The position numbers and the translations under genes are program-made. The notes beneath the pieces are model-generated. The model saw only the letters and a list, made by a program, of their open reading frames with translations. It had not been told where the DNA came from and did not search any database. From assembly GCA_002269645.1 (NCBI GenBank), contig NIVC01001763.1, positions 62,001 to 126,000 on the forward strand: a DNA stretch of 64,000 nt. Reading direction: 5' to 3'. This document shows, piece after piece, positions 1 through 58,940 of this stretch (position 1 is its first letter; every line of letters begins with the position of its first letter). The DNA is from Macrostomum lignano. Lineage: Eukaryota.

Positions 1-200
1 GATGTCCCAGCGGCCCAGGCTCGATTCCAAGTGCAGTCACATTAATTTGGGGCTAAGTGAGAATCTCGCCTTGGCTCTGCTCGTGCAATTAACGGCCTTG
101 AGGGCCAACCCCCAAGGCACATGGCAAGGAAGTGTACATGCCTCATGATAAATAAAGTTAGGGCCGCTGTACACCCCTGTGTGAGTGTGACATGTTTAAA
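1..200 (+). mobile_element. tRNA-derived SINE-like repeat, family 2 (5' end cut by the window edge)
   Basis: B-box-like GGCTCGATTCC at 18-28; positions ~1-80 closely match the reverse complement of ~15770-15850. Confidence 0.55.
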
Positions 201-1934: not shown

Positions 1935-3242
1935 GATAGAGGGACATGGCGCGAGGTGCTGAACGATAGAGAATCGATTAATTCTAGGGGCAGAGGGACA
2001 GGGCGTGAGGTAGGTGCTGAAGGATAGAGAATCGGGTTATTCTAGGGCGGAGGGACTGGGCGTGAGGTGAGTGCTGAGGGATAGAGAATCCGATTATTCT
2101 TGAGGCAGAGAGACAGGGCATGAGGTGGGTGCTGAGGGATAGAGAATCCAATTATTCTAGAGGCAGAGAGACAGGGCGTGAGGTGGGTGCTGAGGGATAG
2201 AGAATTCGATTATTCTAGAGGCAGAGAGACAGGGCGTGAGGTGGGTGCTGAGGGATAGAGAATCCGATTATTCTAGAGGCAGAGAGACAGGGCGTGAGGT
2301 GGGTGCTGAGAGATAGAGAATCCGATTATTCTTGAGGCAGAGAGACAGGGCGTGAGGTGGGTGCTGAGAGATAGAGAATCCGATTATTCTAGAGGCAGAG
2401 AGACAGGGCGTGAGGTGGGTGCTGAGAGATAGAGAATCCGATTATTCTAGAGGCAGAGAGACAGGGCGTGAGGTGGGTGCTGAGGGATAGAGAATCCGAT
2501 TATTCTTGAGGCAGAGAGACAGGGCGTGAGGTGGGTGCTGAGGGATAGAGAATCCGATTATTCTTGAGGCAGAGAGACAGGGCGTGAGGTGGGTGCTGAG
2601 GGATAGAGAATCCGATTATTCTTGAGGCAGAGAGACAGGGCGTGAGGTGGGTGCTGAGGGATAGAGAATCCGATTATTCTTGAGGCAGAGAGACAGGGCG
2701 TGAGGTGGGTGCTGAGGGATAGAGAATCCGATTATTTTTGAGGCAGAGAGACAGGGCGTGAGGTGGGTGCTGAGAGATAGAGAATCCGATTATTCTAGAG
2801 GCAGAGAGACAGGGCGTGAGGTGGGTGCTGAGAGATAGAGAATCCGATTATTCTAGAGGCAGAGAGACAGGGCGTGAGGTGGGTGCTGAGGGATAGAGAA
2901 TCCGATTATTCTTGAGGCAGAGAGACAGGGCGTGAGGTGGGTGCTGAGAGATAGAGAATCCGATTATTCTTGAGGTAGAGAGACAGGGCGTGAGGTGGGT
3001 GCTGAGGGATAGAGAATCCGATTATTCTTGAGGCAGAGAGACAGGGCGTGAGGTGGGTGCTGAGGGATAGAGAATCCGATTATTCTAGAGGCAGAGAGAC
3101 AGGGCGTGAGGTGGGTGCTGAGAGATAGAGAATCCGATTATTCTAGAGGCAGAGAGACAGGGCGTGAGGTGGGTGCTGAGAGATAGAGAATCCGATTATT
3201 CTAGAGGCAGAGACTGGACCGTGTGAGGTGGGTGCTGAGGGA
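1935..3242. repeat. 58-bp minisatellite, ~22 copies
   Basis: Unit agagagacagggcgtgaggtgggtgctgagggatagagaatccgattattcttgaggc. Confidence 0.95.
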
Positions 3243-4061
3243 TTGAGTTCAGGCTTGACCTATCTAAAATATTGTACAGTCAGCAATGGAGTTGGATTTC
3301 AAGATTCATTAGATTCTGTTTTACCTTTTGTTTGCTCAAAACTGTAAAGTTTTTGTTGCATTAATTTCCTGTTTTCGAAACTCTGAGTCGAGACTGACAA
3401 AGACGAACGGCTTAGTTTTGGCTACTGACTGGGCATGCCCGCGGGAAATTAATCCGGCGGTAGGTAGCATTTGCAGTAGCTTAATAGGGATTTGGGATCT
3501 TATCATCGATTATCCATCTTCTTTAGCAATAAGAGTGGATTAGCCAGCACCACCCCGCCCCCTAGAGACTGAAATCAAAGCAACAGCTGCAGATATGGAA
3601 TTAGATGATTTCCTTTGCACAGCTGTGGCCCAACTGATACTCGTAAATATGTTTATTTCAATTTTCGATCCAATCTGGTAAATTTTTGCGCAATCAATTT
3701 GAGCGAATGTGATTCAATCCCCAAAGGGAATTATGCGATATCGAAATATTCTGCCGAAATCATTTCAGATCGCCGATCGACAATGGGATTTTAATGGGCG
3801 GTCGATGCAGCCCGGCCTGGCGGCAATCAGCAGTGACACTCTCAAGCTTCAGCACATCTGTATTTCATGCATCAAAATCATTATGCAAACTCGCACTCAC
3901 TTCAACTGTCTATTATTTTTTTGCCTCCTTGAAGAGAAAAGCATACAAACAGATCTTCAAGATACTCTGGACCATATGGTCACTTTACCCATATAGAGAT
4001 AGCGAATACTATGGGTGTAGTGATAGTGGGAGATGGAAGGGAGAGAGATACATGTATAGGA

Positions 4062-13100: not shown

Positions 13101-14515
13101 ACACCTGCCGGCTGTGCATTACCTGGACGCGGATGAATTCGCCTTCGCGACGCTGCAGCAAGCCAAAGATTTGGTCCGCCCGCTCGCGGTCGCGGCTGGC
13201 CGCGTCGGCCTGCGGAGCGGCTTCCGCTGCGGTGGCCGCATTGGCACCCGTTGGATCGTCATCCGGGATCTGCGGGGGGGGAAGAGGGGGAGCGGAGCAT
13301 TGAGTTTGGTAGCTGGTTCGTCTGAGCGGGACCTGTGAGGCTGAACTTGAGGATCTGTGAGGCTGAACTTGAGGATCTGTGAGGCTGAACTTGAGGATGT
13401 GAGGTTGACTTGAGGATCTGGGAGGCTGAACTTGAGGATCTGGGAAGCTGAACTTGAGGATCTGGGAGGCTGAACTTGAGGATCTGTGAGGCTGAACTTG
13501 AGGATCTGGGAGGCTGAACTTGAGGATCTGGGAAGCTAAACTTGAGGATCTGGGAGGCTGACTTGAGGATCTGGGAGGCTGACTTGAGGATCTGGGAGCC
13601 TGAACTTGAGGATGTGGGAGGCTGAACTTGAGGATCTAGGAGGCTGAACTTGAGGATGTGAGGCTGAACTTGAGGATCTGGGAGGCTGAACTTGAGGATG
13701 TGAGGCTGAACTTGAGGATGTGAGGCTGAACTTGAGGATGTGAGGCTGAACTTGAGGATGTGGGAGGCTGAACTTGAGGATGTGAGGCTGAAATTGAGGA
13801 TGTGAGGCTGAACTTGAGGATGTGGGAGGCTGAACTTGAGGATCTAGGAGGCTGAACTTGAGGATCTGGGAGCCTGGTGGCGACTCAGCAACTGAGGATC
13901 TGTGAGGCTGGCCCAGCAACTGAGGATCTGCGAGGCTGGCCCAGCAACTGAGGATCTGGGAGGCTGGCCCAGCAAATGGGCATCTAGGAGGCTGGCCAAG
14001 CAACTGGGGATCTGGGAAGCTGGCCCAGCAACTGAGGATCTGGGAGGCTGGCCAAGCAACTGGGGATCTGGGAGGCTGGCCCAGCAACTGAGGATCTGGG
14101 AGGCTGGCCCAGCCACTGAGGATCTGGGAGGCTGGGCAAGCAACTGGGGATCTGGGAGGCTGGCCCAGCAACTGAGGATCTGGGAGGCTGGCCCAGCAAC
14201 TAGGGATCTGGGAGATAACATCCCAAATAAACATGCTTAAAAGTGCGGCACACCGCGTGCAAGAACTCGCAAAGCTAAGGACAGAAGCCTCACCTCAATG
14301 GAGAGATCCACACTGGAATTCTTGGAGGCGATGCCGCTGGCCGAGGAGCCGACCAAGTGCACCGTGGCCTTGGGCAGGGTCTCCGACACCAGCTCGGTGA
14401 GTCGGTCGATGGCCAGCTGTCGCTGGGCGGCCTCCTCAGCCGACAGCAAAATGCAGTTATAAAACGCCTGCAGTTGCTCGCCCAGGCTGCGGTTGGACAT
14501 GTACTCAGTGCTCAT
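10145..14515 (-). CDS. Non-canonical poly(A)/poly(U) polymerase (GLD-2/TUT family) fold, predicted catalytically inactive, with low-complexity C-terminal tail; ~742 aa
   Basis: Exons 14515-14294, 13269-12861, 12301-11869, 11309-10145; all junctions GT-AG with matching phases 0/1/2; total 2229 nt. Motifs: HLVGSSASGIASKNSSVDL (GS loop), REWALSRQL...LTGYAVALLVLFHMEQ (PAP-associated helix), LPCPVSGENAGR (NRM position). AATAAA on the minus strand about 70 nt after the stop. Confidence 0.85.
10430..10795 (-). repeat. Coding minisatellite, 33/36-bp unit (AAKKPEASGES / VVKKPEANSGES), ~11 copies
   Basis: In frame within the last exon of the NTase gene. Confidence 0.9.
11362..11860. repeat. 33-bp intronic minisatellite (NTase intron 3)
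   Basis: Unit ctgttacagacaggataacagcaactcaagagg. Confidence 0.93.
12345..12840. repeat. Degenerate ~16-bp intronic minisatellite (NTase intron 2)
   Basis: Unit agtgggtcaatgattc. Confidence 0.88.
13335..14215. repeat. Compound 22-bp plus 28-bp intronic minisatellite (NTase intron 1)
   Basis: gaggctgaacttgaggatctgg (13335-13870) followed by gaggctggcccagcaactgaggatctgg (13870-14215). Confidence 0.93.
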
Positions 14516-14694
14516 GGCTGGCGGGCTGCGAGGCTTTCTTAGAAAATGAGGAAGGAGAAAACATACTGATTTTTAAATGGGAGCACTTCCCCTAGTCTAA
14601 GTTCCAAATATTCTCTCTATTCACTATTGTTAAAAGGCAAAGCTTTTTAAATCCACAAATTCTTTTAATTGCACTATTAAGAGAATTATGCCTA

Positions 14695-15659: not shown

Positions 15660-15876
15660 GTACTGGCGCACTTTAAGCGACATTGCCATGTCACACAACC
15701 GACGAGAGGCATTACTGCCCATTCCGACTCCTCTGAGCAGGCACACATACTTCACTGTGCCTTGCTGGCAGAGCCAAGCCGAGATTCCAATTTAGCCCGA
15801 AACTAATTTGACTGCACTTGGAATCGAGCCTGGACCGCTGGCACATCAAGAGCGCCCACCAGACCATCAGGCTCTA
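15660..15876 (-). mobile_element. tRNA-derived SINE-like repeat, family 2
   Basis: Minus strand reads GAGCCTGATGG (A-box-like) ... GGCTCGATTCC (B-box-like, 15830-15820); the body matches window positions ~1-80. Confidence 0.55.
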
Positions 15877-19000: not shown

Positions 19001-20824
19001 AGGGTTCAGGGTGATTCTGGATAGGGTTCAGGGGCGATTCTGGATAGGGTTCAGGGCGATTCTGGATAGGGTTCAGGGCGACTCTGGATAGGGTTCAGGG
19101 TGATTCTGGATAGGGTTCAGGGGCGATTCTGGATAGGGTTCAGGGCGATTCTGGATAGGGTTCAGGGGCGATTATGAGTAGGGTTTAGGGGCTTCTAGCA
19201 ATCAGCGCACCTGAGATAGCAGTGCCCGTTGTGAGCTCGCGCGTAGCCGAAGTTAAAATTGATGGCTTTAGCGTGCCCGATATGGAGAATTCCGTTGGGC
19301 TCGGGAGGGAATCTCGTGAATACCTTGCCACCAGTCTGCTCGAGGTGCCGCCCGAGCAGAAATCGAGTCCGCGGCGTCATCACGTAGCCGTCAGTAAGGT
19401 AATTTTCGCCCGGCTTGTGAAATTTGGCCGCGTCGCCGCTGATCATCTGGTCGGCCAGGGAGCGGGTCTCTTCGCGGAAGACCTCCGCGTTCCCGTTGGC
19501 GGCGGCTGCGACTGCCGCTGGCTTGCCTCTGGCAGCTGGTTGCTTAGCAACTAAAGAGGCGTTGGCGGCGCCGGTTCGGTCAGCGTCGGTCTTGGGGCCA
19601 AGCAAGTGAAGGATTTGCACCTCGAATTCGCATTTCACCTGCTTGCCGTCGGCCCATTTCAGGTTGGATCTTTGATAGCGGGGTAAAGGTGGGTAGGATT
19701 GCGTGGGACAGGATTGGCTTTAAACATTTCTTGGCTAGATATCCTACTAGATCTGAGCTAGATAACCTACTAGATCTCAGCTAGATATCCAACTAGATCT
19801 CAGCTAGATATCCAACTAGATCTCAGCTAGATATCCAACTAGATCTGAGATAGATATCCAACTAGATCTGAGATAGATATCCAACTAGATCTCAGCTAGA
19901 TATCCAACTAGATCTCAGCTAGATATCCAACTAGATCTCAGCTAGATTTCCAACTAGATCTGAGATAGATATCTTACAAGATCTGAGATAGATATCTAAC
20001 TAGATCTCAGCTAGATATCCAACTAGATCTGAGATAGATATCCAACTAGATCTGAGATAGATATCCAACTAGATCTGAGATAGATATCCAACTAGATCTG
20101 AGATAGATATCCAACTAGATCTGAGATAGATATCCAACTAGATCTGAGATAGATATCCAACTAGATCTGAGATATATATCCAACTAGATCTGAGATAGAT
20201 ATCCAACTAGATCTGAACTAGATATCCAACTAGATCTGAGATAGATATCCAACTAGATCTGAGATAGATATACAACTAGATCTGAACTAGGTAATTAGAC
20301 ACAAGCACTACCTACGCCAAGACCCCCCAGAGAAGCTGTATGGACACAAACCTGGCCTCTCCGAGAAGCTTATTTATTCCAAACGCATAACGCTGTGCCA
20401 GCAGCTCCTGCTTATGCTTATTAATCACTTCTTCTACCGCCCGTTCGATATCTTCGGGAGTGATTGACACTCCGATGCCGCAGGCGGCTTTGAAGGCGTC
20501 CAAGTCGCCGCTGCCGATTTGCTTGAGGCAAAAATCGCAGGCGGCTGTTACCTGAGCCTCCGTGGCCAGATCGCCGTTAATAATGTGGTTGACAATCAGT
20601 TCATGACCGGCAAATGCCTGCTTTTTCAGCTTAGTGCCAGTGTGGTAAATCAAATTTCCCTGCACTTTACTCAACTCCTTGGAGCCCAGCTTGTCCTTGG
20701 CGCAGCGGACCAAGGCCACTAAGCGCTCGGTGAGGTCTTTGTTTCGCATTGTTTCTTCAATCTTAGGCCCAGATAGGCCTAGACTGGCCAGACATTCATT
20801 TGCCATGCTTGTTGAAGTGCTCAT
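16078..20824 (-). CDS. QARS1: Glutamine--tRNA ligase (cytoplasmic glutaminyl-tRNA synthetase), ~793 aa if the 1-nt deletion in the last exon is restored
   Basis: Exons 20824-20352, 19669-19211, 18744-18654, 18411-18031, 17717-17004, 16340-16078; GT-AG junctions, phases consistent. Motifs [18 protein letters not shown] (HIGH), [71 protein letters not shown]. Confidence 0.97.
16603..16895 (+). mobile_element. CORE-type (MIR-like) tRNA-derived SINE in QARS intron 5, antisense to the gene
   Basis: A box TAGCCTAGTGG at 16610-16620, B box GGTTCGATTCC at 16654-16664, CORE-like tgtgtccttgagcaagacactcaactc...cagttcacgcagctgtaaaatggg at 16683-16744, (ATT)n tail at ~16875-16895. Confidence 0.8.
17795..17990. 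repeat. ~30-bp intronic minisatellite (QARS intron 4)
   Basis: Unit catgaaggatcatggagggggcatcagaca. Confidence 0.85.
18452..18620. repeat. ~32-bp intronic minisatellite (QARS intron 3)
   Basis: Unit gagtgacgagagcagtgaatttggtgacccca. Confidence 0.8.
18765..19195. repeat. 22-23-bp intronic minisatellite (QARS intron 2)
   Basis: Unit ggatagggttcagggcgattct. Confidence 0.92.
19730..20290. repeat. 23-bp intronic minisatellite (QARS intron 1)
   Basis: Unit ctagatctgagatagatatccaa. Confidence 0.93.
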
Positions 20825-21660
20825 GGAAAATAATAAGCAGATTTTTATAGTTATACAGATATAGTCTACTTCAATATTTAGCTAGATGCTTAGTCTAGAA
20901 TGAAACTATAACATAATTTTGTCTATATCATGGGTCGGCACTATTTTTTACATTAAGGGCCAGATAAAGAATTCAGTTCATGGCTGCGGGCCACATGAGA
21001 AAGGAATTAAGGCGATAAAATAGTTGAGAGATAACAGAGAGGAGAGGCTACAGCTCCTGAATAAAAAAAGATATCAACATGATTTTAACTTTGTTTTCTT
21101 TGTGACAAAATTTCCTTTCATTTGACCCATGGGCATAAAATTTTATGGCTCTATTAAAGAGCTACGTTAGACATTCCAGGAACTTTTGGGACACCCCTCA
21201 TATGTTCATTTTTCAAGTGTATTTTAGGAATCTATCTTTACTAGGTTAACTTGCTAATAGACACTTTGTCTCTAGATGCATATGAGATATACTGACAGTT
21301 AACAATTAGTAACTCTAATTATGGACAAGCATTCAAGCAAGCATACAAACCTTAGAGATTTAGTATATTTAGATAGTAACTCTAATTTAATGCCCGTACC
21401 TTGTTGCTTAAAGCAAATAAAAGTTATTTCAATCAACTTTGCCTTGTTAAAGCTCTAAAATATAAATGTCAATATAAGATAATACTTGTTATACTTTTAA
21501 AAATTATCTTTGTAACCAATATATAGTTGATCTTACTAGTTAAAATAAAAATATAGATCTCATTTATTAAATTAAAATCTAATTTTATTTATATATTTAT
21601 GTTGTAGACTTTTTGCCTAAATGTCTTTCTTTTGTTGCTAAAGAAATAGGGTTATTACCT

Positions 21661-21710
21661 TATGGTTAGAGCATTAGACTTATGACTGAAAGTTTAGAAA
21701 TTTAATTCCC
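21661..21710 (+). mobile_element. Decayed tRNA-head fragment of the CORE-SINE family
   Basis: tatggttagagcattagacttatgactg...tttaattccc aligns to the 16615-16665 head, with the CpGs mutated. Confidence 0.55.
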
Positions 21711-21829
21711 TATTGTAGCCAATGACCATTATCAGATAATGTCTAGCACAGCACAGATTGGTCTCTAGCAATGAATATAGTCAGGTGTGCTGGTATAGTC
21801 TAGCAAAAAGGAAAAGGGAGCATCCCACA

Positions 21830-21934
21830 ACAGCATAGTTTAGAACTTGGCTGCAATAGGTTTGATTCTTAATCTTAATTTTTGTCCTTAAGCAGGACAC
21901 TTAACTTTGCTTGCTCCAGTTCACCTAGCTATAC
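21830..21934 (+). mobile_element. Decayed CORE-SINE copy
   Basis: B box remnant GGTTTGATTCT at 21859-21869, followed by tttgtccttaagcaggacacttaactttgcttgctccagttcacctagct. Confidence 0.65.
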
Positions 21935-22554
21935 CAATATTAGCTAAGATAAGTAAAAGTGTATATGTCAAGCCCTTAATCCTTGGACTGAACAGCCATG
22001 TGCAACCTTTAGATATACTATAGAATAACTATAGCTAAGCTGTCAATTGCATAATTGTCCATTAGGGCCTATGCAATCAATTATTTTTATTATTTTTATT
22101 GTAAATAGCTTGCAAATGCCAATATGGCAACTACTAGAACCTATCAACAAAAATGTTTATTACTTGCCCCTAATTTTTACTATAGAATATCTGTTGCCAA
22201 GTCTTATTGTTGGCTTCTAGTGAATTTGATGACAAGCTATTTTGGCAATAGCCAATTTGGCAAATGCTTAAGTTAAAAGAAAGCTATGACACTTTTATTA
22301 AAATTCAACATATTGTCATTAGACATTAGTCCTTGCCACTGAAATTAAGGTAATTTAGATGTAGTCATATTAAATAATACATTTTCAAAATGATGTCTAT
22401 AAAAGCTATACTATGCCTCTTTAGAGTATTTAACTAATAGCTAAATTAACAACTTATACATAAAACATTAGTAGAAGCTTAGACTTATACTAAATTTACA
22501 AGGGCTTATATAGACTTATACTAAAAATCAAAGTTTTTTAAAATAAATTTAACT

Positions 22555-24700
22555 AGGGTGTCCAGTGAGCCTATTCTTAGCATGTGCAAAAAATGTTAAA
22601 AAGTGGTCTTTTTTAGATGGCTATAACTTTTTAAATATTTCAGATATGACAACATTCTTATATTTATTGAAAAGTAGACAAACAGATCTTTCAAATGATA
22701 TATAGTTTGCATGTTCACTACATACAATTACAAGATACAGATTGTCAAACATTGCATACATCTTCAAAACTGTGCCAATTTTGCTTGAAAATATGGGATA
22801 GGGAGAATTCATTTTTTAGTAAATAAGTGCATAACTACTAAGAATGCTTGCATATTGGTTGTAGGTAACTTCCTGCAGGTCATTTTAAATAAAAAAAATT
22901 TTGTTCAAAAATATTTTTTATGTACATATAAAATTTAAAATGGACATAACTTTTAAATGGAAAGAGTGGCCACCCTAATTCTTCTTGCTACTTACTTCTA
23001 GTGAAAAAATGAAACTTTTAAGCAAGACAGGATGAGTGTAACTCCTGTCGCAGTATGCCTAACAGAAATTCCCAAAATGCATGCAAATCCCTATGAGACA
23101 AAAAATTGTTTAAGAAATTCTTAAAGAAATTTTTTAAGCTCAAAAGAATGGCCAGTTAGTTTCTTCAATAAAATGATAGCAAAACAGGCCAAGCTCTTAG
23201 CCTGATTGCAGCGCATGGGCATTTTGGCGGACAGCGTCCGGCGTGGATCTAATGTGGCGCGGCGCGGCGCGTACGGCGAGCAGCGATTAGTACGGCGCGG
23301 CGCGGTACTAATTAGATGCCGAGGCATTTAGGCTTGATAAGACAGTCATAGTTACTCCTGCCGTTTACCCAAACTGCGTTAATTTTGCTTTAGGGTTTCT
23401 TTCACAGGTAAGTCATTTCACAGTGTGGCGCAGGTTGTGTAGGCGTCTGGCGTACTTAAGCCATGCGCTGCAATAGGGGCTCTTAGCTCTTTGTCCTAAA
23501 GGCACATCCTGATAACTTTTGCCACACCAAAGTTATTAAGCATAGGGCCTATTTGGCACAGCTGTACATGCAAATACACTATGGAGATAGGAAAAATTTA
23601 CATTGAGGGGCTGTATGCTCCACAAATCAGTCACACATCCAATTTTTTTCCAAAAGAGGAAAGCTCTTTCAATAGACACAATTTTAGCGTATTGAACTCT
23701 AATTGCACTCTAACTAGCTTATTGAGTTAGTAGAAAGTTAAGCATCAGCACAACAATTCTTAGACAACTTTTTTATCAAGAGTTAAAGAGTTGTTTGGAA
23801 CAACTTTTTAGTGACTTTTATCACATTATCATTTTTAACAGGTTAAGATTTACATGAGCTACATAGATTTATAGACACTATTGACACCTAGAATGGTACT
23901 TTGGAAGACTTGTTTTCATGGAAATAATGGTCAAATCATTTGCATACTACTTACAGTAAGAAGTCAAGAATCTTACTAATTATTGTATACATGTATTACT
24001 TTGATATGAAAGTAATAAAAATAAGGTAACTGGAAAATATACTATGACACTATGACAAAGCCAAAGAATGATACTCCTGCAATTTTTTCTTCACCTCTTT
24101 TGTCTTAATCCCCAGATATCTAGAGATATAGAATAGTATATATATACAAAAAAGATCATAAAAAATTGTGGTAACAAAAATCTATAAAATAACACCTCAA
24201 ACACTAAAATCTTCATAAAATAAAAAAGTTACAGACATTTTACTGTTACAGACATGCTTTTTGCCCAAAAATGGCAAAGTTTTTAGTGTATTTGAGATAG
24301 GGAAAAAACACAAAACTTTTGAAACAAAAAAACTTCATAACTTTTTTATGCAATATTACTTGATCAATTTTCAAATTTTCTGTTGTGTATGCAGCTTGTA
24401 TGCTGGTTAGGGTTCTTGCATTCTGATTGGCTGGGGGTTTTGTCTGTCTGCCCAGACTGGCCTAGGCCAGGTAGGGAGTTTAATGTTTGCTAAATTATGC
24501 TAGTTAGTAGTTAACTATAATATAAGTGTGCACTGGCCTTTCAAAAGCCTTTGTGACTTTTTCTACCTTGCAATCGCTTCTCACATCTTATTCATTTGGC
24601 CACGCTGCTTCAAAGTACAACAATTTCACTTATAACACTTAGAGCTACAGTATGACAATTAAAATGTGATTTCAAAAAAAAATTTCTCACTGGACCCCCT
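22555..24700. mobile_element. Non-autonomous or decayed DNA transposon, 2146 bp, 15-bp TIRs, 9-bp TSD
   Basis: Left end AGGGTGTCCAGTGAG; right end CTCACTGGACCCCCT (reverse complement AGGGGGTCCAGTGAG, 1 mismatch). Flanked by AATTTAACT at 22546-22554 and 24701-24709. Confidence 0.75.
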
Positions 24701-24922
24701 AATTTAACTATTATAGGGGCCTATTGTATGTACATATATATTAGCAGTAGCAATAGCTAAGCAGTGTTCTTTTGTCATTGCAACATTGACTGTTTTTTTC
24801 TATTTCATTTTATACTTGCATTTGATGATTGCACTGCTTGCATTTCTAGTCAAATATAAAGCAACAGACTTAAGGTAGGTATAAAATATTTTGAAGATAT
24901 CTTTATAGACTATAGTCTAGAT

Positions 24923-25310
24923 CAGGGGTCCCCAACCTGTGGCCCGCGAGCCCTTTTTTGTGGCCTGCAGCATCTTCCAGTAGTTTGCATTACATGCAAC
25001 CCACCAAGTCTATCACTGGATTTCATTGCAGCCCCCAAAAATGTTAAAATTTTCCTAGCTGTATTGAAAATATTCCCAGAAATTTCTTACCCTCTCCACT
25101 GCTAGAAGCAAAGCTTCAATTCATTTGGATTGCTATTTTAGCCACTCCTACTGCACAAATGACATGTACACGCAGTCAAGAGTTGAAGTGAAAAGTAGGA
25201 AGGAATGCTAGCTTTGCTTGGCTTTGCGTATTTTATATTAGCATGTGGCCCATACACCCTAAGCCAGTTGTCAATATGGCCTGCCACCCATAGAAGGTTA
25301 AGGACCCCTG
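24923..25310. mobile_element. hAT (Buster/Charlie-like) MITE, 388 bp
   Basis: TIRs CAGGGGTCCCCAACCT and reverse complement CAGGGGTCCTTAACCT. Perfect 8-bp TSD GTCTAGAT (24915-24922 and 25311-25318) with a central TA. Confidence 0.9.
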
Positions 25311-28300
25311 GTCTAGATCATACTAGGTGCATGCCTAAAAAGAAAATGAATAGTTAAAAATGCATGCCAAAAAAATTAAGTGCATATCCATACCCTTAAA
25401 TCTAGGCTAGTGTTTTGACAATAAATTACCTTTTTACATTGAATAAAGGACCTTTTGGCTAATAATTTGGTTACTTATTTATGACTTGTCTATACTATTT
25501 ATAGCAGAAAATTGATATGTATAAACATTTGTTTAAATGCCTTTTAACAAAATAAAACACTAGGAAGCTTGAAATTTATGCTCAAAAATCAGCTTTTCAA
25601 TCTTTTTTCCACTTAACACTAACTCTGTATGATTTTATTAAGTGCATGCTAGGTATACATGCACACTATTTTCTTAGGGGTAATGCATGCCAACTTGTGC
25701 ATGCCTAACTTTTTGCGTGCAAAGCAAGGTCAATGCATGCCTGAAATTTAAGGCAATAGGCATATACTAAATGATCCCAAGTGTGCCATTGCATATAGAA
25801 ATGAATCATATTATTATACTATGACCGACCTTTCTCTACTTAATTATCCAGATCTCTTGAAGCAGATATTCAAATCTCTTGCAGTTGGTGTCATTTTAAA
25901 GAAGAGACTTGCCACTTTCAAATGACACCAGACTCATGCAAGTGCAACTTTCCATACGTCCACACTGAGTAATAGTAACACTACTTTCTAACTTTCCGGA
26001 CGCCCCTCGTATTTATTGTTGCTTTACTTTCAGAAGTTGTAGCTTTTCAAGCGACCAGCAGGCAAGCAAGCAACCATGAATGCTACGTACAACGTACAAT
26101 TATCATAAGTTTCATTAATTTAATACGCTGCATGCATGCATGCATGCGGTTACATCATATAATTCATGAACATTTATAACAAAGCATCAACATCAAGTAC
26201 GTTACTGCAGATAATGTTTTTTATTTTTTTATTTGACTAAAATTCAGTATGTCTTGTACGTATAAACTTGACCGCTTTAAGACAAATTGATTTTTGGAAA
26301 CTTATACCTGACCTGACCACTTTTGAGGGCTCCGCCTCCGCGCAATGAACAGGACTGCGTCTTACGAACTCACGCCGCGCGTCTCCGTACCTCTGCCCCT
26401 CGATCATTGTGCTTAATAAATGTATTAAATATAATTTGTCCCTTGCTCTTAAATAATTTTGTTTGATTATTAATTTCATGTAAGTTATAGCTGTATCAAA
26501 TTATTGTTTTATTAATGATGATCATTTGAACATTTCGTTACGATGAAATCGACCTAAAAATCGGGGTGCGCCGAAAGTAGTTCATTGGATTTATACATAA
26601 GCCCGCTTTTAATTGAGTAAAAGACATGTCACCGTGGCATATGACATAGCATTTACCCGATCTTATGCATTCGTTTTTGTACCTTTAGTCCGGGTTTTGA
26701 TCGATGCCACTCGGGTGAAAATCGATAGAGACATCTAAATCTATGTACAATTTTTGCGGCTCGCGTACAAACGTATTGGCGAGGCCAAGTAAAAAATAAG
26801 TAATTGATGAATTTGTGAGTTTGTCTATTTATTTAAAGAGAGACTGTGACAGCGCTGAAAGATGTGCTGCCCAATCAAAACTTTAAGGTTAAAAGTTGTA
26901 CCTCAACGACGGGGCCAATGCACCAATCAGAGAACGGCAAGTCGCCTCAACATGTGTAAACAATTTTCTAGCAGGTGAAATCCCGGTCATGCGGCTTTTT
27001 GGATGCGCGCTTCTTTTGCGAGGGCGACTGGTGATAGCAATGTTTGTGTAAAATCGTGCATCGCAAATACATGTATTATAATATTCAAAATTAACTAGCT
27101 CATATCGAAATCAGCTACCATAAGCAACATATGTTTTACACAATGCTAATCCATAGTCACCTTTCTATAGTGTCATTTTCATCCTCGCAAAACTTTTAAC
27201 TCTGTGTGTCAGTGTGTTAGCTCAAAAGTTAGTATGCATTCTGCAAATATTTAACCACTTATTGTTAACTTGCCACAATATTTGAAACTTTTAAACCAAG
27301 CCATTGACTCACTTGACTAACTGCATGGGGCTCCAGTATCCGGATGAAGCGGGGAGGGATCGGCACCAATTCCACTAACCCCTGCAGCGACAACGATCAG
27401 TAGTTATAGTGCTGCGGTGTCGCACAGGGAGATCCGCGGTGGTGCCAGAGTCTACGGAGCAGTCCATAGGCGCCTTGCAGCGGTTGAGAATTGTGTGATG
27501 AATTTGAGCACTGTACTCGAGAGGCGGTGGTTCGCTCAATGACGTGGATCACCGATTGATTCTCTGATGAGTGGACGATATGATCTTCTTCTCCCAGACT
27601 CGCGGAATGGAGTTGAGGAGCAGATCGAACTTCGTTCTGTGGAAGACGGTGCTGGGATCGAGAAGGACCAAGCAATTATATGTTGATTTCTGTAACTAAA
27701 ATTTCGAAAATAAATTTTTTCAATTTTGTTTTCTAAAAAAATTTTTTTTACCATTTTTATTCTAAAAGATGTTGAGTCAAGTAAATGAAATCTCTTTGAG
27801 TTAGATCGAAACAAAACTATTTAAATTCTCATGCTCTGGATGCGCGGGACCAAACAATACCCCCTCAACCTTGTTAGGATGGCAGCACAGCTAAGTGCTC
27901 GTTAACTATTCCCATATTTCATTTTTGCAATAAAGAACAGTGCCACTCTCTCGTCGATGCGTAAACTCTCTATTTGACTGTCTGTAAGCTTCCAACCTGC
28001 ATGGCTTCTCATTTCAATACTATAGTAAAGCAGGTGATTTCTCAGGTGACTGCATCTTCCACTTGTTTTCCTTGGTAACGTAATAAACACAAGGCACGAC
28101 AGCGATTGGCATCGAAAAAGCGTATGAATGCATGCATGCAGTCAAATGCGCTGCAGAGAGCTTTTCTCATTTCATCCTTTTTAAGGATAAGGAAACCCCT
28201 TGCAATGCAGTCCCACAGTCGGGGCGCCGTTCGTTCAGAAATTCATACACAATGCCCTATTGTTTTAACTAAAGAATGGCCTGTACACGTACAGGCTGTT

Positions 28301-28397
28301 GAGCATTCTGAATTTTCATCCCCAACCCTGCAGCATAGGTTTAGAAAACTGCTTCAGCTTTCAGTCTGACTAATTGAATTTTGGCTTGCTGACTAAA

Positions 28398-28440
28398 GAG
28401 TATATAAATATAACTGATCGGGAGGAATTGCTTTTCAGCG
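28398..28440 (+). promoter_or_regulatory. Candidate TATA core promoter of the 132-aa gene
   Basis: TATATAAA at ~28401-28408, about 30 bp upstream of a TCAG initiator-like site and about 100 bp before the ATG at 28501. Confidence 0.4.
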
Positions 28441-28500
28441 ATCGCGATCCCGCCTACGTAACAAGCGGAGCCTATATCCGTAACACTCGCTCTCCTTACC

Positions 28501-29494
28501 ATGCCTCTGAGAAAGAAGCTGTCAAGATCACAGGTGGCGTCCCGGCCAGTCAGGGTGTACACTGATGGAGAGATTCAGCGGCGCATTGCCGAGCTGCCGT
28601 TCAGCGTGCAGGTGTGCAAAATTTTAAATTAATTAAGGCTGCTACAGCCTAGCTGCCGGCTTATCTTTGTATTCAAAACCTGCTGAGTCAAATCTACCCA
28701 GTTTGAACCCAAATCTGCCCAATCTGAACCCAAAACTACTCAGTTTGAATCCAAAACTACCCAGTTTGAACCCAAATCTACCCAGTTTTAACCCAAATGT
28801 ACGAGTAACCAATCTGAACCCAAATGTAACCAATCTGAACCCAAATGTAACCAATCTGAACCCAAATGTAACCAATCTGAACCCAAATGTAACCAATCTG
28901 AACCCAAATCTACCCAAGCTGAACCCAAATCTACCCAGTTTGAACCCAAATCTGATTCACCTCACAAATCTACCCTAGTCCAACTGTATAGTCGCTAGTA
29001 CGTGCAAAACTACCCTAAACAAAGCGCAAAACTACCCTGAACAAAGCGCAAATCTACCTCTAAACAAAGCGCAAATCTACCTCTAAACAAAGCGCAAAAC
29101 TACCCTAAACAAAGCGCAAATCTGCCCCTAAACAAAGCGCAAAACTACCCTAAACAAAGCGCAAAACTACCCTAAACAAAGCGCAAACTACCCCCAACCC
29201 GAGCAGCTGGTGATGATGAGCGCCATGGAGAGCCTGATCCAGAGTGAGATTCGCGCATCGCTCAGCTCCCTGACGGCAGCCAGGCAGGATGTCCGCTCGC
29301 TTCAATCGCACCTGGACAGCCTGGTAGTTGACGGCTTTCAAGAGGCCGAGACCGCGCGTGAAGCCGCTAAGGGGGCCATCCGGTTGGAGGACTTTGCCGA
29401 CAGAAGCCAATCGACGCTGCCGAAGAACCCGGCTGGGCCGAGCAGCCAGCTGTCAATCCAGGACGAGGTTATCAACAAGACCAGCGTGGTCTGA
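28501..29494 (+). CDS. Putative small helical/coiled-coil protein of unknown function, 132 aa, 2 exons
   Basis: ATG at 28501 with an in-frame upstream stop; exon 28501-28611 (CAG|GT), exon 29207-29494 (cAG|CTG), phase 0. TATATAAA at ~28401 and AATAAA at 29555-29560. The intron is filled with minisatellites as in the neighbouring genes. Confidence 0.6.
28690..29195. repeat. Two adjacent 21-bp intronic minisatellites
   Basis: aatctacccagtttgaaccca and aaccaatctgaacccaaatgt (28690-28970), then aaactaccctaaacaaagcgc (29005-29195). Confidence 0.9.
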
Positions 29495-30190
29495 TGCGAT
29501 TAATAATCTCTATTTCGGGATCGATATAAACTAAAAATTTGCCTCAAAATATTTAATAAACTCGGAAAAATTTCATGTCCCTATGTATCGAATTTAATAT
29601 TTTTTTGAGAAGCCTCTATACTATTAGAAAAATCCCAGTGACCTGCAGAATATCGTAAAAAACCTAATATTCAACTTACAGGATATTTCCCTGCATCATT
29701 GCCGCTAGAAATATTCCCTCATGAACTAAATCATTGTGTGCAACATTTTTAACTACTATAAAGTCCTAATTTTAGTCTCATTTCGCACCAGTTTAAGAAA
29801 AATTTGTTTTATTGCCAGCTAAAATAAATACGCTTGTATACTATTAAATATCCAGAATCATAGTGATTTGGGTGTTGCCAATTTTGTTATATTCATTATG
29901 ACAAGCTATCAAAACCAATGTCTACTTTATTAGGTCAAAGTAAAAAAGGTTTTAAAACTTGACTCAATTTGTTTAAGTTTTTGCTAATATGTTTTTGGCT
30001 TATATTTGTTTTAAATTATTTAAATATTTCAGGTATTTGTTTATATTATTTATTAATTATTTATATTATGTTAATTTAGTATGATTTTTCTATATTTGAT
30101 TTGTTATGATAAGTTGCACTACACAAATTTCGTCTGGATTTATTTGTTTACGATATAGCGAATCGATCTAATAACTACATCTGAAAAGTT

Positions 30191-30222
<32 letters not shown>

Positions 30223-30817
30223 CATATAATCCATTTTAAAGGAATTTATCCAGTCGATTTTTTTCAAACTTGCACCATTCGATCAGAAATTCTTGCGAAT
30301 CGGTACAGTTCTCTTTGGCTAAGAGATTTCTTCATTTTAAAGGTGTTAAATATTCAAAAAACAGTATTTTCCCTATCTAATTAGTGTATTTTTCTTGCAG
30401 TGAGAGCTCAATACGTCTACGGCCATAGACTAAACTTCAACTTCTTGAGCTGATGCTCCGAGCTATAAATAATTAAATATGAGTATTCGAAAACATGCTT
30501 TTTTGCATAAGGGAGAGATATCAGCCAGTGCACTTTAAAAGCATTGAAGTATTGCGCCACTATATAGAATATGCAAGGGAGAGAGAAATGCTTAGTGGCT
30601 GCGTGCTGTTGAGGGGACGCTTGCTGTGTGGGGGATGCAATTGCTGTCTAGATCTGGGGGATTGTAAGTATCAGATTAAACCATAGACATAAAGACTTGA
30701 CGGGATTTTATTGAATATTACCAAATAAAATCCCGGGGAACGCAAATATTGTCACGGAAAGTCTTTATTTCTATGGATTATGTATAATTTTACCCAGACG
30801 CAATAACAAAATATTTT

Positions 30818-36834: not shown

Positions 36835-38270
36835 TAACCGCCCCCCAGCAGTATCCACCCCCTAGCAGTATCGGTCCCCAGCAGTATCCGCCCCCTGCAG
36901 TATCCGCCCCCTGCAGTATCCGCCCCCAAACAGTATCCGCCCCAGCAGTATCCGCCCCAGCAGTATCCGCCCCCAGCAGTATCCGCCCCCAGCAGTATCC
37001 GCCCCAAGCAGTATCCGCCCCCAGCAGTATCCGCCCCCAAGCAGTATCCGCCCCCTGCAGTATCCGCCCCAAGCAGTATCCGCCCCCAGCAGTATCCGCC
37101 CCCAGCAGTATCTGCCCCCAAGCAGTATCCGCCCCAGCAGTATCCGCCCCCAGCAGTATCCGCCCCAGCAGTATCCGCCCCACCAGAACCCACCTCCACC
37201 AGAATCCGCCCCTGCAGTATCCGCCCCAGCAGGATCTGTCCCCAAACAGTATCCACCCCCTGCAGTATCCGCCCCCAAGCAGTATCCGCCCCCAGCAGTA
37301 TCTGCCCCCAAGCAGTATCCGCCCCAGCAGTATCCGCCCCCAGCAGTATCCGCCCCCAGCAGTATCCGCCCCAGCAGTATCCGCCCCACCAGAACCCACC
37401 TCCACCAGAATCCGCCCCTGCAGTATCCGCCCCAGCAGGATCTGTCTCCAAACAGTATCCACCCCCAGCAGTATCCGCCCCCCAGCAGTATCCGCCCCAC
37501 CAGAACCCACCTCCACCAGAATCCGCCCCTGCAGTATCCGCCCCAGCAGTATCTGTCCCCAAACAGTATCCGCCCCCAGCAGTATCCGCCCCCAAGCAGT
37601 ATCCGCCCCCAGCAGTATCCGCCCCAGCAGTATCCGCCCCAAGCAGTATCCGCCCCCAGCAGTATCCGCCCCCAGCAGTATCCGCCCCCAAGCAGTATCC
37701 GCCCCCAGCAGTATCCGCCCCAGCAGTATCCGCCCCAAGCAGTATCCGCCCCCAGCAGTATCTGCCCCCAGCAGTATCCGCCCCAGCAGTATCCGCCCCC
37801 AGCAGTATCCGCCCCCAGCAGTATCCGCCCCAGCAGTATCCGCCCCAGCAGTATCCGCCCCAGCAGTATCCGCCCCAGCAGTATCCGCCCCAGCAGTATC
37901 CGCCCCAGCAGTATCCGCCCCCAGCAGTATCCACCCCCCAGCAGTATCCGCCCCCAAACAGTATCCGCCCCAGCAGTATCCGCCCCAGCAGTATCCGCTC
38001 CAAACAGTATCCGCCCCTAGCAGTATCCGCTCCAAACAGTATCCGCCCCAGCAGTATCCGCCCCTAGCAGTATCCGCTCCTGGGAAAATCCGCCTCCAGC
38101 AGTATCTGCCCCAGCAGTATCCGCCCCCTAACAATATCCGCCCCACCAGAACCCAGCTTCACCAGGATCCGCCCCTACTAGAATCCATCTTCACGAAGAA
38201 TCCGCCCCATTAGTAGCCGCCCTCCAAAAGTATCCGCCCCTGGGAAAATCCACCCGTCTCAAAAATCCGC
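36835..38270. repeat. 14-17-bp length-variable minisatellite upstream of APCDD1
   Basis: Unit agcagtatccgcccc(c), with cagaacccacctccaccagaatccg inserts. Confidence 0.95.
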
Positions 38271-38343: not shown

Positions 38344-51057
<12,714 letters not shown>

Positions 51058-52460
51058 AAGCAGAACTCGCTGATAAAAGCTCAAAAGAAAATGCTGAAAA
51101 TCTTTGAATTATTCCTAAACCCAAATGCTGCACTGCATCAATGCTTTTTTGTCGTAAAATTTCAATGTGTCTCAGTGTTATGCGCGTGTAAAATTTGTAA
51201 GAATAATACATTTCCAAACGCTTTACAATCTGCGCATTGTTGTCTCTCAATCCAAGTTTCTTTTTTCTGGCAGGCGACAGCTGATAAAACTGCGTATCGG
51301 ATCGGGGCGCTGCGAGAAGGAGAAATAGAGGTCAAGTGGCTCCAGATCCCACTACAAAGATTGGCGCAGCTCAATGGAATTTACGCGCCGCTCATGATTA
51401 ACGGCCTGTGTTAAGACATCGCGGCCCAACAGGGGGGTCACTGGGTCAGGAGCTGCTGCAGACAAAGAGGCGATTTATAGATAACGTCTCCTGATTGTTG
51501 ATCTGACAGGGTGAACACTTCGACAAGTGGATGGATTCTCTTAGACCAGAGCCCGGACTCTCGCACCGAGCCAACATTAATTTGGGGCCAAGGGGGTCGG
51601 GTTGTACGATTGTAAATCCCTGTGTGACCGCTTGCCACAGCTCCGCTGCAAACTATCTGATCTTGAATTCGATGGCAACAATCGCTGCTGTCTCAAAGCC
51701 TTTCCGCGGCAGCAATCAGGATACAGTTTGTTCCTGACAATTCTGTTTGTGACGCAACACCCTCGGCTTCAAATTGAACCAGTAGATGCAGATGCAATCA
51801 ACCCCCCAGTAAACGAAGACTGTGAGGAGGGGGATCGAGCCAGCGAGGGATTGGGGATTCTATACACCCCTAGTGTCCCAATTTCTCGCACAGGCACGCA
51901 AAATGCAATTTCCAACTCGAGCGGGGGGTGACCGCGTGAGAAGATTTCATTACGCCTGTTGCTTTGAGGCCTGAGAGACTGCACGAGGTCGCTAGAGAAT
52001 GAGAAGAGAAGGCCGAGTCCAGTTTGGTGTCAAAGTCAAGCGAAAGTGCGCGGACTCGGTCGGCTGGTGCTGCTGGCTGGAGGACCCTGGGAGCAGAAGG
52101 GAAAGATCCATAGAGCCAGACCGCGACCCGCGAACTTCACTACTTAATCCATTTTAACTTTACGTATTCAGATGGATAACTTTCATATGCCTCTTGGTGG
52201 TTGAGAAACAGAAACATTGAATATAAGTGCTGTGCACCGTCGCTTCATTGAAATTTAGTGTAAAATAGATGAATAATGGTTGCTATAGCCTACTTAAAGT
52301 AGGAAAATAGCAATTTACTTTTGTGACGCATCATTCTTATGCGAATTTTTTTGTCTCAAGGGTCGCATCTATTGCTTCAGCAGCGGGACTGACTTCTACT
52401 TGAAGTAATAAGAAAAAATGCCGCAAAACTTGCCTACTCCACGACTCTCCCAAATTCTGA

Positions 52461-58400: not shown

Positions 58401-58940
58401 CTCTTCCCAACTCTCCCCGACTCTTCCCGACTCTTCCCAACTCTCCCCAACTCTTCCCAACTCTTTCCAACTCTCCCCAACTCTCCCCAACTCTCCCCAA
58501 CTCTTCCCAACTCTTCCCAACTTTCCCCAACTCTTCCCAACTCTTCCCAACTCTCCCCGACTCTCTCCAACTCTCCCCAACTCTTTCCAACTCTCCCCAA
58601 CTCTCCCCAACTCTCCCCAACTCTCCCCAACTCTCCCCAACTCTCCCCAACTCTCCCCAACTTTTTCCAACTCTCACCAACTCTTCCCAACTCTCACCAA
58701 CTCTCCCCAACTCTCCCCGACTCTTCCCAACTCTCCCCAACTCTCCCCAACTCTCTCCAACTCTCCCCAACTCTTTCCAACTCTCACCAACTCTCCCCAA
58801 CTCTCACCAACTCTCCCCAACTCTCCCCGACTCTTCCCAACTCTTCCCAACTCTCCCCAACGCTCCCCAACTCTTTCCAACTCTTTCCAACTCTCCCCAA
58901 CTCTTCCCAACTCTCCCCAACTCTCCCCAACTCTCTCAAA
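52461..58940. repeat. 10-bp satellite, ~647 copies, strictly in register
   Basis: Unit ctct(c/t)(c/t/a)cc(a/g)a; every printed 10-mer block stays in phase. Confidence 0.98.

What the first reader, a model, noticed from the sequence alone, without database searches (positions are those of the whole stretch)
20900..25900. Sharply bounded CpG-depleted domain: fossil of germline DNA methylation on a transposon field
Seen: by eye there is no CpG between about 21400 and 23040 (~1.6 kb), and very few up to 25900 outside one island, while the flanking genes and other intergenic DNA are CpG-rich. GCATGC, the double-deamination product of GCGCGC, recurs about six times in 25325-25740. The domain holds at least four transposon or SINE remnants and begins within ~100 bp of the QARS start codon. 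Inference: long-term TE-targeted CpG methylation and deamination with a sharp boundary at a housekeeping promoter, which would be notable in a lineage thought to have little methylation.
Basis: partly seen in the sequence, partly recalled or inferred. Interest (0 to 1): 0.7.

Follow-up and report, generated by a model that had tools for sequence, protein, structure and literature searches.

The report
CpG-erased transposon pile beside flatworm QARS
A 5-kb stretch just upstream of a flatworm housekeeping gene is a pile of small DNA transposons that has lost about 90% of its CpG sites, which most likely records past DNA methylation of transposons in an animal group where methylation patterns are unknown; one locus cannot prove this.

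Summary
Between the CpGs at 20745 and 25957 there are 15 CpGs outside one 277-bp unit, against about 120 expected (P ~1e-34). One run of 1,654 bp has none. After masking tandem repeats, every 500-bp window with CpG o/e below 0.4 lies here. Equally AT-rich DNA elsewhere scores 0.65-1.2, and QARS coding DNA scores 0.77-1.18.

The stretch is a transposon pile. It holds a 2.1-kb hAT-like element, a 388-bp hAT-type MITE, and a 277-bp MITE nested in the first, all with intact target-site duplications. No SINE or tRNA remnant was detected. The GCATGC cluster is a same-strand repeated motif, TGCATGCC(T/A)A, not independent double deamination.

In 22554-25956, TpG+CpA excess accounts for about 70% of the missing CpGs, a deamination signature. 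The 1.7 kb next to QARS shows no such excess. QARS is closest to Macrostomum lignano (78%), a lineage that keeps DNMT1 and DNMT3.

Methylation-linked CpG erosion of transposon DNA is the best explanation (about 0.5). I could not tell whether it happened at this locus or before insertion. The "boundary at a promoter" is unproven.

The parts
20312..20824 (-). First coding exon of glutaminyl-tRNA synthetase (QARS). The start codon is at 20824. The open frame runs on into the intron, and the coding part ends near 20348.
   Evidence: Pfam PF04558 (tRNA_synt_1c_R1), E = 4e-39, residues 11-158. PDB glutamine-tRNA ligases, E = 1e-20. Further exons run down to about 16081. CpG o/e is 0.77.
20746..25956 (.). 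CpG-poor domain, defined as the span between the CpGs at 20745 and 25957.
   Evidence: 15 CpGs outside the nested MITE against about 120 expected. All low-CpG non-repeat windows of the 64 kb fall here.
20825..22546 (.). Left host DNA next to QARS. It is AT-rich (GC 0.29-0.33) and no transposon ends were recognised in it.
   Evidence: 5 CpGs with about 33 missing. There is no TpG/CpA excess (-17), but TpA is in excess (+50) and GpC o/e is about 2.0. No significant inverted termini remain after removing the nested elements.
22554..24701 (.). 2.1-kb non-autonomous hAT-like DNA transposon.
   Evidence: Terminal inverted repeat TAGGGTGTCCAGTGAG / TAGGGGGTCCAGTGAG (15/16). It is flanked by a perfect direct repeat, ATTTAAC at 22547-22553 and 24702-24708, which reads as 9 bp AATTTAACT if the ends are set one base inwards. 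Without its nested unit it has 4 CpGs against 45 expected and CA/TG rho 1.28, CI 1.20-1.36.
23202..23478 (.).
   Evidence: Inverted termini with ATTGCAGCGCATGG matching 14/14. Perfect direct repeat GCTCTTAGC at 23193-23201 and 23479-23487. 26 CpGs, o/e 1.2-1.3.
24709..24914 (.). Host DNA between the two hAT-type elements.
   Evidence: 0 CpGs and CA/TG rho 1.32.
24923..25310 (.). 388-bp hAT-type MITE.
   Evidence: Terminal inverted repeat CAGGGGTCCCCAACCT / CAGGGGTCCTTAACCT (14/16). Perfect 8-bp target-site duplication GTCTAGAT at 24915-24922 and 25311-25318. 4 CpGs, o/e 0.21, CA/TG rho 1.32.
25319..25956 (.). Right host DNA. It contains the cluster of the TGCATGCC(T/A)A motif (25328-25744) and a 16-nt-arm hairpin (25886-25930).
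   Evidence: 2 CpGs and CA/TG rho 1.36. Five same-strand matches to the motif lie here, out of 13 in the whole window. The hairpin is I21.
25957..26785 (.). CpG-replete block that ends the domain on the right.
   Evidence: 29 CpGs in 644 bp, o/e 1.38 at GC 0.36. o/e is 1.53 in 26286-26785. Composition other than CpG changes only mildly across this boundary.

Best explanation
The stretch is a pile-up of non-autonomous cut-and-paste transposons. A 2.1-kb hAT-like element carries a younger nested MITE, and a 388-bp hAT-type MITE sits nearby. They are inserted into about 2.6 kb of old AT-rich DNA between the QARS start codon and a CpG-replete block.

Everything except the youngest insertion has lost 80-100% of its CpGs. 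The most likely cause is cytosine-5 methylation of CpGs in transposon DNA in the germ line of a macrostomid-type flatworm, followed by 5mC deamination (CpG to TpG/CpA).

Shown here:
- the depletion and its limits;
- the transposon anatomy and nesting order;
- a TpG/CpA excess covering about 70% of the missing CpGs in 22554-25956;
- the absence of any such depletion in the housekeeping gene and in other non-coding DNA of the window.

Inferred:
- that methylation was the agent;
- that it acted in the germ line.

Unresolved: whether the erosion happened at this locus after insertion (a methylated domain) or along the lineages of the source copies, so that the elements arrived CpG-poor.
For: - Depletion statistics.
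- Three TIR+TSD elements found in the real sequence, against 0.03 per dinucleotide-preserving shuffle. None of 150 shuffles had three or more.
- Graded CpG o/e that fits the nesting order: host 0.00-0.26, 2.1-kb element 0.09, MITE 0.21, nested and therefore youngest MITE 1.2-1.3.
- TpG+CpA excess of +29 against 40 missing CpGs in the 2.1-kb element, +9 against 14 in the MITE, +20 against 18 in the right host DNA, and +51 against 72 overall.
- QARS coding CpG o/e is 0.77-1.18 and AT-rich control DNA is about 0.96. The genome background is therefore not CpG-depleted.
- The closest QARS is Macrostomum lignano at 78%, with the next best at 67% or less. That species retains DNMT1 and DNMT3 and has low-level 5mC (PMC11292947, PMC9246332).
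- Transposon-only methylation without gene-body methylation is documented in a few animal lineages (PMC12460157).
Against: - The 1.7 kb next to QARS has no TpG/CpA excess.
- The domain as a whole is not 'control DNA plus CpG decay'. In-silico deamination of control DNA predicts CA/TG rho 1.50, GC 0.357 and GpC 1.42. The domain shows 1.21, 0.316 and 1.71.
- Target-site duplications are perfect and the inverted termini are nearly so. Post-insertion loss of about 90% of CpGs therefore needs a CpG-dinucleotide loss rate at least 25-30 times the average site rate. That is the upper end of mammalian values (my knowledge).
- Zero CpGs in 1.65 kb is more extreme than a methylation-mutation equilibrium of about 0.2 (P = 0.001).
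- Dispersed repeats outside the domain keep their CpGs. A SINE-like pair at 89% identity shares 3 CpGs with 0 of 9 differences being CpG transitions, and an inverted-repeat element has o/e 0.73. Any methylation is therefore not aimed at all repeats.
- No other copy of the domain's elements could be obtained, so the mutation spectrum could not be measured.
- No methylation data and no DNMT gene are in the window.
Confidence: 0.5

Rival explanations
1. CpG-poor for reasons unrelated to methylation in this lineage. The elements and the old host DNA simply have this composition. Either they entered by horizontal transfer from a CpG-depleted donor genome, or the sequence is intrinsic to the families. 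The boundaries are then only the edges of the insertions.
For: - Perfect target-site duplications argue for little time since insertion.
- The domain differs from local DNA in dinucleotides other than CpG: GpC 1.71 against 1.43, GA/TC 0.73 against 0.94, TA 0.94 against 0.81.
- Three elements of apparently similar age have very different CpG o/e (0.09, 0.21, 1.2-1.3), as family-specific composition would give.
- hAT elements are known to transfer horizontally (my knowledge).
Against: - Four or five independent pieces (two elements, left host DNA, right host DNA) are all depleted side by side, while nothing else in 64 kb is.
- Non-autonomous elements amplify within the host, so their composition mostly reflects history in this genome.
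- The TpG/CpA excess still has to be explained.
- The right boundary is a CpG step with little change in other composition.
Confidence: 0.22
2. A local mutational or selective regime other than 5mC deamination. Examples are AT-biased decay of old non-functional DNA, or selection against CpG in transposons to escape a CpG-reading silencing system.
For: - The left 1.7 kb shows CpG loss without TpG/CpA gain and with TpA excess (+50).
- GC is lower than a pure CpG-decay model predicts.
Against: - Other equally AT-rich DNA in the window keeps CpG o/e at 0.65-1.2.
- General AT-biased decay does not remove one dinucleotide to zero while GpC rises to 2.0.
- RIP-type indices are not met: (CpA+TpG)/(ApC+GpT) is about 1.4.
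Confidence: 0.1
3. Consensus artefact. Heavily methylated CpGs were systematically miscalled as TpG/CpA in a long-read-only assembly, so the CpGs exist in the animal but not in the sequence.
For: - It would explain depletion down to exactly zero alongside intact target-site duplications.
- It would also explain a TpG/CpA excess in the right 3.4 kb.
Against: - There is no TpG/CpA excess in the left 1.7 kb.
- The excess covers only about 70% of the deficit elsewhere.
- 15 CpGs do survive.
- Systematic errors of that completeness are not usual with current basecallers (my knowledge).
- The sequencing platform is unknown.
Confidence: 0.04
4. A chance fluctuation in AT-rich DNA.
For: None beyond the low GC content.
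Against: P = 3e-15 for the CpG-free run and about 1e-34 for the whole domain. AT-rich control windows are not depleted.
Confidence: 0.001

Closest known systems
Transposon-only CpG methylation without gene-body methylation, reported for early-branching nematodes, ctenophores and the chaetognath Paraspadella gotoi (PMC12460157)
   Same: The footprint is confined to transposon DNA. A housekeeping gene body (QARS) shows no CpG depletion. The lineage, Platyhelminthes, uses trans-splicing, and that paper links trans-splicing with loss of gene-body methylation.
   Different: Here there is only a sequence footprint at one locus and no methylation measurement. Other repeats in the window are not depleted. 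The methylation toolkit of this species is unknown.
Methylation-driven CpG depletion of vertebrate bulk DNA and old transposon copies (CpG o/e about 0.2, TpG/CpA about 1.2; my knowledge)
   Same: There is a CpG deficit with partial TpG/CpA excess. The depleted DNA is bounded by CpG-replete segments. A young insertion is still CpG-rich.
   Different: The depletion is deeper (0.00-0.13). It is local rather than genome-wide. The CpG-rich 'island' is a transposon insertion, not a promoter.
hAT-superfamily non-autonomous elements and MITEs
   Same: There is an 8-bp target-site duplication, short inverted termini beginning YARNG (CAGGG, TAGGG), and no coding capacity.
   Different: The duplication of the 2.1-kb element can be read as 7, 8 or 9 bp. 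No transposase homology is available to confirm the superfamily.
Repeat-induced point mutation (RIP) of fungi
   Same: It is a repeat-associated loss of a C-containing dinucleotide with a drop in GC.
   Different: RIP removes CpA and creates TpA. Here CpA/TpG is normal or raised and CpG is the dinucleotide lost. No duplicate copies are present in the window.

Membership tests
Methylation/deamination CpG fossil | CpG observed/expected far below the local background at equal base composition | tested here: met
   o/e is 0.00-0.27 in the domain, against 0.52-1.53 (median 0.82) in all other non-repeat windows. P is about 1e-34.
Methylation/deamination CpG fossil | Reciprocal excess of TpG and CpA matching the missing CpGs | tested here: inconclusive
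   Met in 22554-25956 (+51 against 72 missing). Not met in 20825-22546 (-17 against 33 missing). For the domain as a whole the rho is 1.21, against 1.50 predicted by in-silico decay of control DNA.
Methylation/deamination CpG fossil | CpG-transition bias among copies of the same transposon family | not testable with these tools
   No second copy exists in the window or in the searchable collections. The source genome is not in the protein or contig index. Repeats outside the domain show no such bias.
Methylation/deamination CpG fossil | CpG methyltransferases (DNMT1/DNMT3) present in the genome, and 5mC on the sites | not testable with these tools
   Only indirect evidence is available. The nearest relative by QARS is M. 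lignano, which is reported to keep DNMT1 and DNMT3 with low 5mC (PMC11292947, PMC9246332).
Epigenetic domain with a boundary at a promoter | The CpG step does not coincide with a change of sequence origin such as an insertion edge | tested here: inconclusive
   On the right, the step at 25827-25956 lies at no recognised element end, and composition other than CpG changes little. On the left, the step lies at the QARS start codon, but the 570 bp upstream, the presumed promoter, are themselves depleted (o/e 0.26).
hAT superfamily (non-autonomous) | 8-bp target-site duplication | tested here: met
   GTCTAGAT matches 8/8 for the 388-bp MITE. The reading is 7-9 bp for the 2.1-kb element.
hAT superfamily (non-autonomous) | Short terminal inverted repeats starting 5'-YARNG | tested here: met
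   CAGGGGTCC... and TAGGGTGTCC..., 16 nt each, matching 14/16 and 15/16.
hAT superfamily (non-autonomous) | Relationship to a hAT transposase-encoding master element | not testable with these tools
   There is no coding capacity in the domain and no genome of the species to search.
CpG-island promoter (for 23212-23466) | A CpG-rich segment that is an original, protected part of the locus and drives transcription | tested here: not met
   The segment is bounded by inverted termini and a perfect 8-9-bp direct repeat inside another element, so it is an insertion. Transcription was not testable.
tRNA-derived SINE remnants inside the domain | A tRNA-like head detectable by tRNA models | tested here: not met
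   ARAGORN finds none at default settings and only noise at relaxed thresholds. Rfam gives no tRNA hit at E up to 10. The window's own SINE-like repeat has no significant match in the domain.
RIP-like mutation | Depletion of CpA/TpG with gain of TpA | tested here: not met
   CA/TG rho is 1.07-1.36 across the parts of the domain.

The most novel reading that the evidence does not exclude
A macrostomid flatworm methylates transposon clusters densely enough to erase their CpGs to vertebrate-or-deeper levels, while leaving housekeeping gene bodies untouched. That would make Platyhelminthes a further animal lineage in which methylation is aimed at transposons instead of gene bodies. It would fit the proposed link with trans-splicing. 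The nested CpG-rich MITE would be a natural reporter for whether the system is still active.
Probability: 0.3. Interest if true: 0.65.

Novelty: new member of a known kind. Interest (0 to 1): 0.45.

Why it matters
[quoted passage not shown] Animals with transposon-only methylation are few (PMC12460157).

If this footprint is general in the source genome, sequence alone would predict such a pattern in a flatworm. It would also supply ready test loci:
- 15 residual CpGs;
- a young 26-CpG insertion inside the eroded DNA;
- two sharp CpG steps.

If instead the elements arrived CpG-poor, the locus is an ordinary nest of transposon insertions.

Tried and rejected
- **Paralogues in the window.** blastn of the domain against the window gave none. 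Transition-tolerant alignment of the nested MITE against the rest of the domain scored 33.5 against a null of 31.2 +/- 3.1, which is not significant. The same test with the window's SINE-like repeat scored 28.5 against 29.9 +/- 3.4.
- **Copies elsewhere.** Exact-pattern scans for the MITE termini found nothing in viral contigs or in metagenome contigs, twice. Exact-protein look-ups of window ORFs found nothing. A word-index search with QARS exon 1 found nothing. The source genome is not in the collections. A literature search for the terminal repeat gave no hits.
- **RNA genes.** There was no tRNA and no credible Rfam match.
- **Coding remnants in the control DNA.** The ten longest frames of 26-34 kb gave no Pfam hits, so I cannot say whether the control DNA is transposon-derived.
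- **Termini for the host DNA.** After removing the nested elements no convincing inverted termini remained. Similarity beyond the termini was at null level for all elements.
- **Non-CpG composition as a boundary marker.** It was too noisy at 300 bp to place the right boundary.
- **Wasik et al. 2015** (the M. lignano methylation data) is not held in the library.
- **Rejected explanations.** Chance, RIP, a mitochondrial insert (no strand skew, no ORFs) and a minisatellite origin (only one 50-bp array in the domain).
Full report
**Observation.** I listed every CpG in the window. There is none between 21395 and 23049. That is 1,654 bp at GC 0.29, where 34.8 CpGs are expected. A tight cluster of 26 CpGs lies at 23212-23466. 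After it only nine more occur before 25957, where density returns to normal. To the left, QARS exon 1 has 26 CpGs, the last at 20745, and then only five follow up to 21395.

Without the 277-bp unit that holds the cluster, the span 20746-25956 has 15 CpGs. About 120 are expected at the background ratio of 0.96, giving P = 8e-35. The CpG-free run alone has P = 3e-15, and P = 0.001 even against a vertebrate-like ratio of 0.2.

The raw sliding profile shows other low-CpG stretches, but these are minisatellite arrays whose units lack CpG. With the arrays masked, all eight windows of about 500 bp below o/e 0.4 lie in 20786-25785. The other 56 windows range from 0.52 to 1.53. They include windows of GC 0.25-0.35 with o/e 0.65-1.22.

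**Context and organism.** The ORF at 20312-20824 on the minus strand is the N-terminal domain of glutaminyl-tRNA synthetase (Pfam PF04558, E = 4e-39; PDB matches). Further exons lie down to about 16081.

A 295-residue query from the catalytic exons finds Macrostomum lignano QARS as the best match at 78% identity. All other hits are at 67% or less. The window therefore comes from a macrostomid-type flatworm that is not itself in the searchable collections.

QARS coding segments have CpG o/e 0.77-1.18. This housekeeping gene carries no gene-body-methylation footprint.

According to the literature held here, planarians and probably schistosomes lack 5mC. M. lignano keeps DNMT1 and DNMT3 and has low-level 5mC (PMC11292947). 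[quoted passage not shown]

**Anatomy of the domain.** A scan for inverted termini directly flanked by perfect direct repeats finds three elements, all inside the domain. Dinucleotide-preserving shuffles give 0.03 per sequence, and none of 150 shuffles had three.
- **Element (a), 22554-24701, 2.1 kb.** Its termini are TAGGGTGTCCAGTGAG / TAGGGGGTCCAGTGAG. It is flanked by ATTTAAC on both sides, which reads as AATTTAACT if the ends are set one base inwards.
- **Element (b), 23202-23478, 277 bp, nested inside (a).** Its termini share ATTGCAGCGCATGG, and it is flanked by GCTCTTAGC on both sides.
- **Element (c), 24923-25310, 388 bp.** Its termini are CAGGGGTCCCCAACCT / CAGGGGTCCTTAACCT, with a perfect 8-bp duplication GTCTAGAT.

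Termini of the YARNG type and 8-bp duplications point to hAT-type non-autonomous elements for (a) and (c). The superfamily of (b) stays open.

The remaining about 2.6 kb has no recognisable ends. It comprises 20825-22546, 24709-24914 and 25319-25956.

No tRNA-like or SINE-like remnant could be detected in the domain.

**The GCATGC cluster.** All six GCATGC copies are real. Five of them belong to one 11-nt motif, TGCATGCC(T/A)A, on the same strand within 420 bp. They are copies of a repeated motif. This could be a set of subterminal repeats or a decayed minisatellite, which is inference. They are not six independent double deaminations of GCGCGC. One variant in the cluster reads TGCGTGC (25716), and a (GCAT)4.5 microsatellite sits in the CpG-normal flank at 26130-26147.

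**Is it a deamination footprint?** I compared each part with 7.6 kb of nearby non-coding control DNA (CpG rho 0.96, CA/TG rho 1.13).

| Part | Missing CpGs | TpG+CpA excess |
|---|---|---|
| 2.1-kb element without its nested unit (CA/TG rho 1.28, bootstrap CI 1.20-1.36) | about 40 | +29 |
| 388-bp MITE | 14 | +9 |
| Right host DNA | 18 | +20 |
| 22554-25956 together | 72 | +51 |
| Left 1.7 kb next to QARS | 33 | -17 |

The right-hand 3.4 kb shows the signature expected from 5mC deamination. The left 1.7 kb next to QARS is different. It has a TpG+CpA deficit, a TpA excess of +50 and GpC o/e of about 2.0. Either its erosion is much older or it has another origin.

Taken as a whole, the domain is not simply local DNA with its CpGs deaminated. 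That model predicts CA/TG rho 1.50, GC 0.357 and GpC 1.42. The observed values are 1.21, 0.316 and 1.71.

**At this locus or before insertion?** The duplications flanking (a) and (c) are perfect, and the termini differ at one and two positions. If the elements had background CpG content when they inserted, losing 91% and 79% of CpGs since then requires a high CpG loss rate.
- With CpG-dinucleotide loss at 10 times the average per-site rate, 18.7 mismatches are expected in the termini and duplications. Three are seen (P = 1e-5).
- At 24 times, P = 0.049.
- Only at 30 times or more is the fit comfortable.

That is about the upper end of mammalian CpG hypermutability (my knowledge). Erosion after insertion is therefore possible only with dense, efficient methylation. 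The alternative is that the elements were already CpG-poor when they landed.

The order of CpG content fits a time series at this locus. Host DNA scores 0.00-0.26, the two hAT-type elements score 0.09 and 0.21, and the nested, youngest unit scores 1.2-1.3. However, all three elements have perfect duplications, so their ages cannot be ranked except by nesting.

The right-hand CpG step lies between 25827 and 25956. It falls at no recognised element end and is accompanied by only mild change in other composition. This mildly favours a regional process. The block beyond it (25957-26785) is CpG-enriched, at o/e 1.4-1.5 with GC 0.36-0.40.

On the left, the step coincides with the QARS start codon. 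The 570 bp upstream of it, where the promoter should be, are themselves depleted (o/e 0.26). The picture is therefore not that of a protected promoter island.

**Repeats elsewhere in the window are not depleted.**
- An inverted-repeat element at 45092-46024 has o/e 0.73. Its 131-bp arms are 93% identical, with 2 of 9 differences at CpGs.
- A SINE-like repeat with a B-box-like GGCTCGATTCC lies at 1-80 and 15768-15847. The two copies are 89% identical, keep three shared CpGs, and none of their nine differences is a CpG transition.

If methylation is the cause, it is therefore specific to this locus or to these families, not to all repeats.

**An unresolved conflict.** The same scan finds a fourth pair, 24293-30380. 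It has termini AGATAGGGAAAA(A/T)AC and a perfect 10-bp direct repeat TTAGTGTATT. It interleaves with element (a), so both cannot be simple insertions. Pairs with a duplication of 9 bp or more are expected only 0.025 times per shuffle of this 14-kb stretch. I keep element (a) for two reasons: its termini are G+C-rich and canonical, and this choice needs only one CpG step. The second pair is unexplained. If it were the real unit, a single element would straddle the right CpG boundary, which would favour erosion at this locus.

**Verdict.** The finding is real and is the only feature of its kind in the window. The best explanation is methylation-linked CpG erosion of transposon DNA in a flatworm lineage that plausibly has the enzymes (confidence about 0.5).
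- the island is a nested young transposon;
- there is no SINE evidence;
- GCATGC is a repeated motif;
- the 'epigenetic boundary at a housekeeping promoter' is not demonstrated.

The main rival (about 0.2) is that the sequences were CpG-poor for reasons unrelated to methylation in this lineage. As a kind of phenomenon it is known. As a possible first indication of transposon-directed methylation without gene-body methylation in a free-living flatworm it has moderate interest. That interest depends on genome-wide and methylome checks that cannot be run here.

Noticed in passing
window 24283-24309 and 30364-30390: A fourth inverted-terminus pair, AGATAGGGAAAA(A/T)AC, has a perfect 10-bp flanking direct repeat TTAGTGTATT. 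It would define a 6.1-kb unit, 24293-30380, that interleaves with the 2.1-kb hAT-like element. The two cannot both be simple insertions.
   Followed up: partly
window 45092-46024: An inverted-repeat (foldback or long-TIR) element with 32-bp perfect termini and 131-bp arms that are 93% identical. No clear target-site duplication. CpG o/e is 0.73, so it is not depleted.
   Followed up: partly
window 1-80 and 15768-15847 (inverted): A dispersed tRNA-SINE-like repeat with a B-box-like GGCTCGATTCC. The copies are 89% identical and keep their shared CpGs. The left copy is cut by the window start.
   Followed up: partly
window 25957-26785: A CpG-enriched block (o/e 1.4-1.5 at GC 0.36-0.40) lies immediately right of the depleted domain. 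It could be a promoter region, but no gene was identified next to it.
   Followed up: no
window 23403-23413: The nested CpG-rich MITE contains a consensus 5' splice-site-like sequence, CACAG|GTAAGT, on the plus strand. It could act as a transposon-borne first exon or promoter, but this was not tested.
   Followed up: no
window 25886-25930: A hairpin with 16-nt arms (15/16 complementary) and a 13-nt loop sits just inside the right edge of the depleted domain.
   Followed up: no
whole window, e.g. 52460-58935, 38586-40514, 36842-38144, 1955-3247: The window is filled with about 36 minisatellite arrays of 4-58-bp units. They include 6.5 kb of ACTCTCCCCA, and many lie inside QARS introns. They dominate the raw composition and CpG profiles.
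   Followed up: partly
window 29210-29494 (+) and 14240-14572 (-): Two exon-like open frames start with ATG: MMSAMESLIQSEIRA... to the right of the domain and MSTEYMSNRSLGEQ... downstream of QARS. The first had no Pfam match. The second was not searched.
   Followed up: partly
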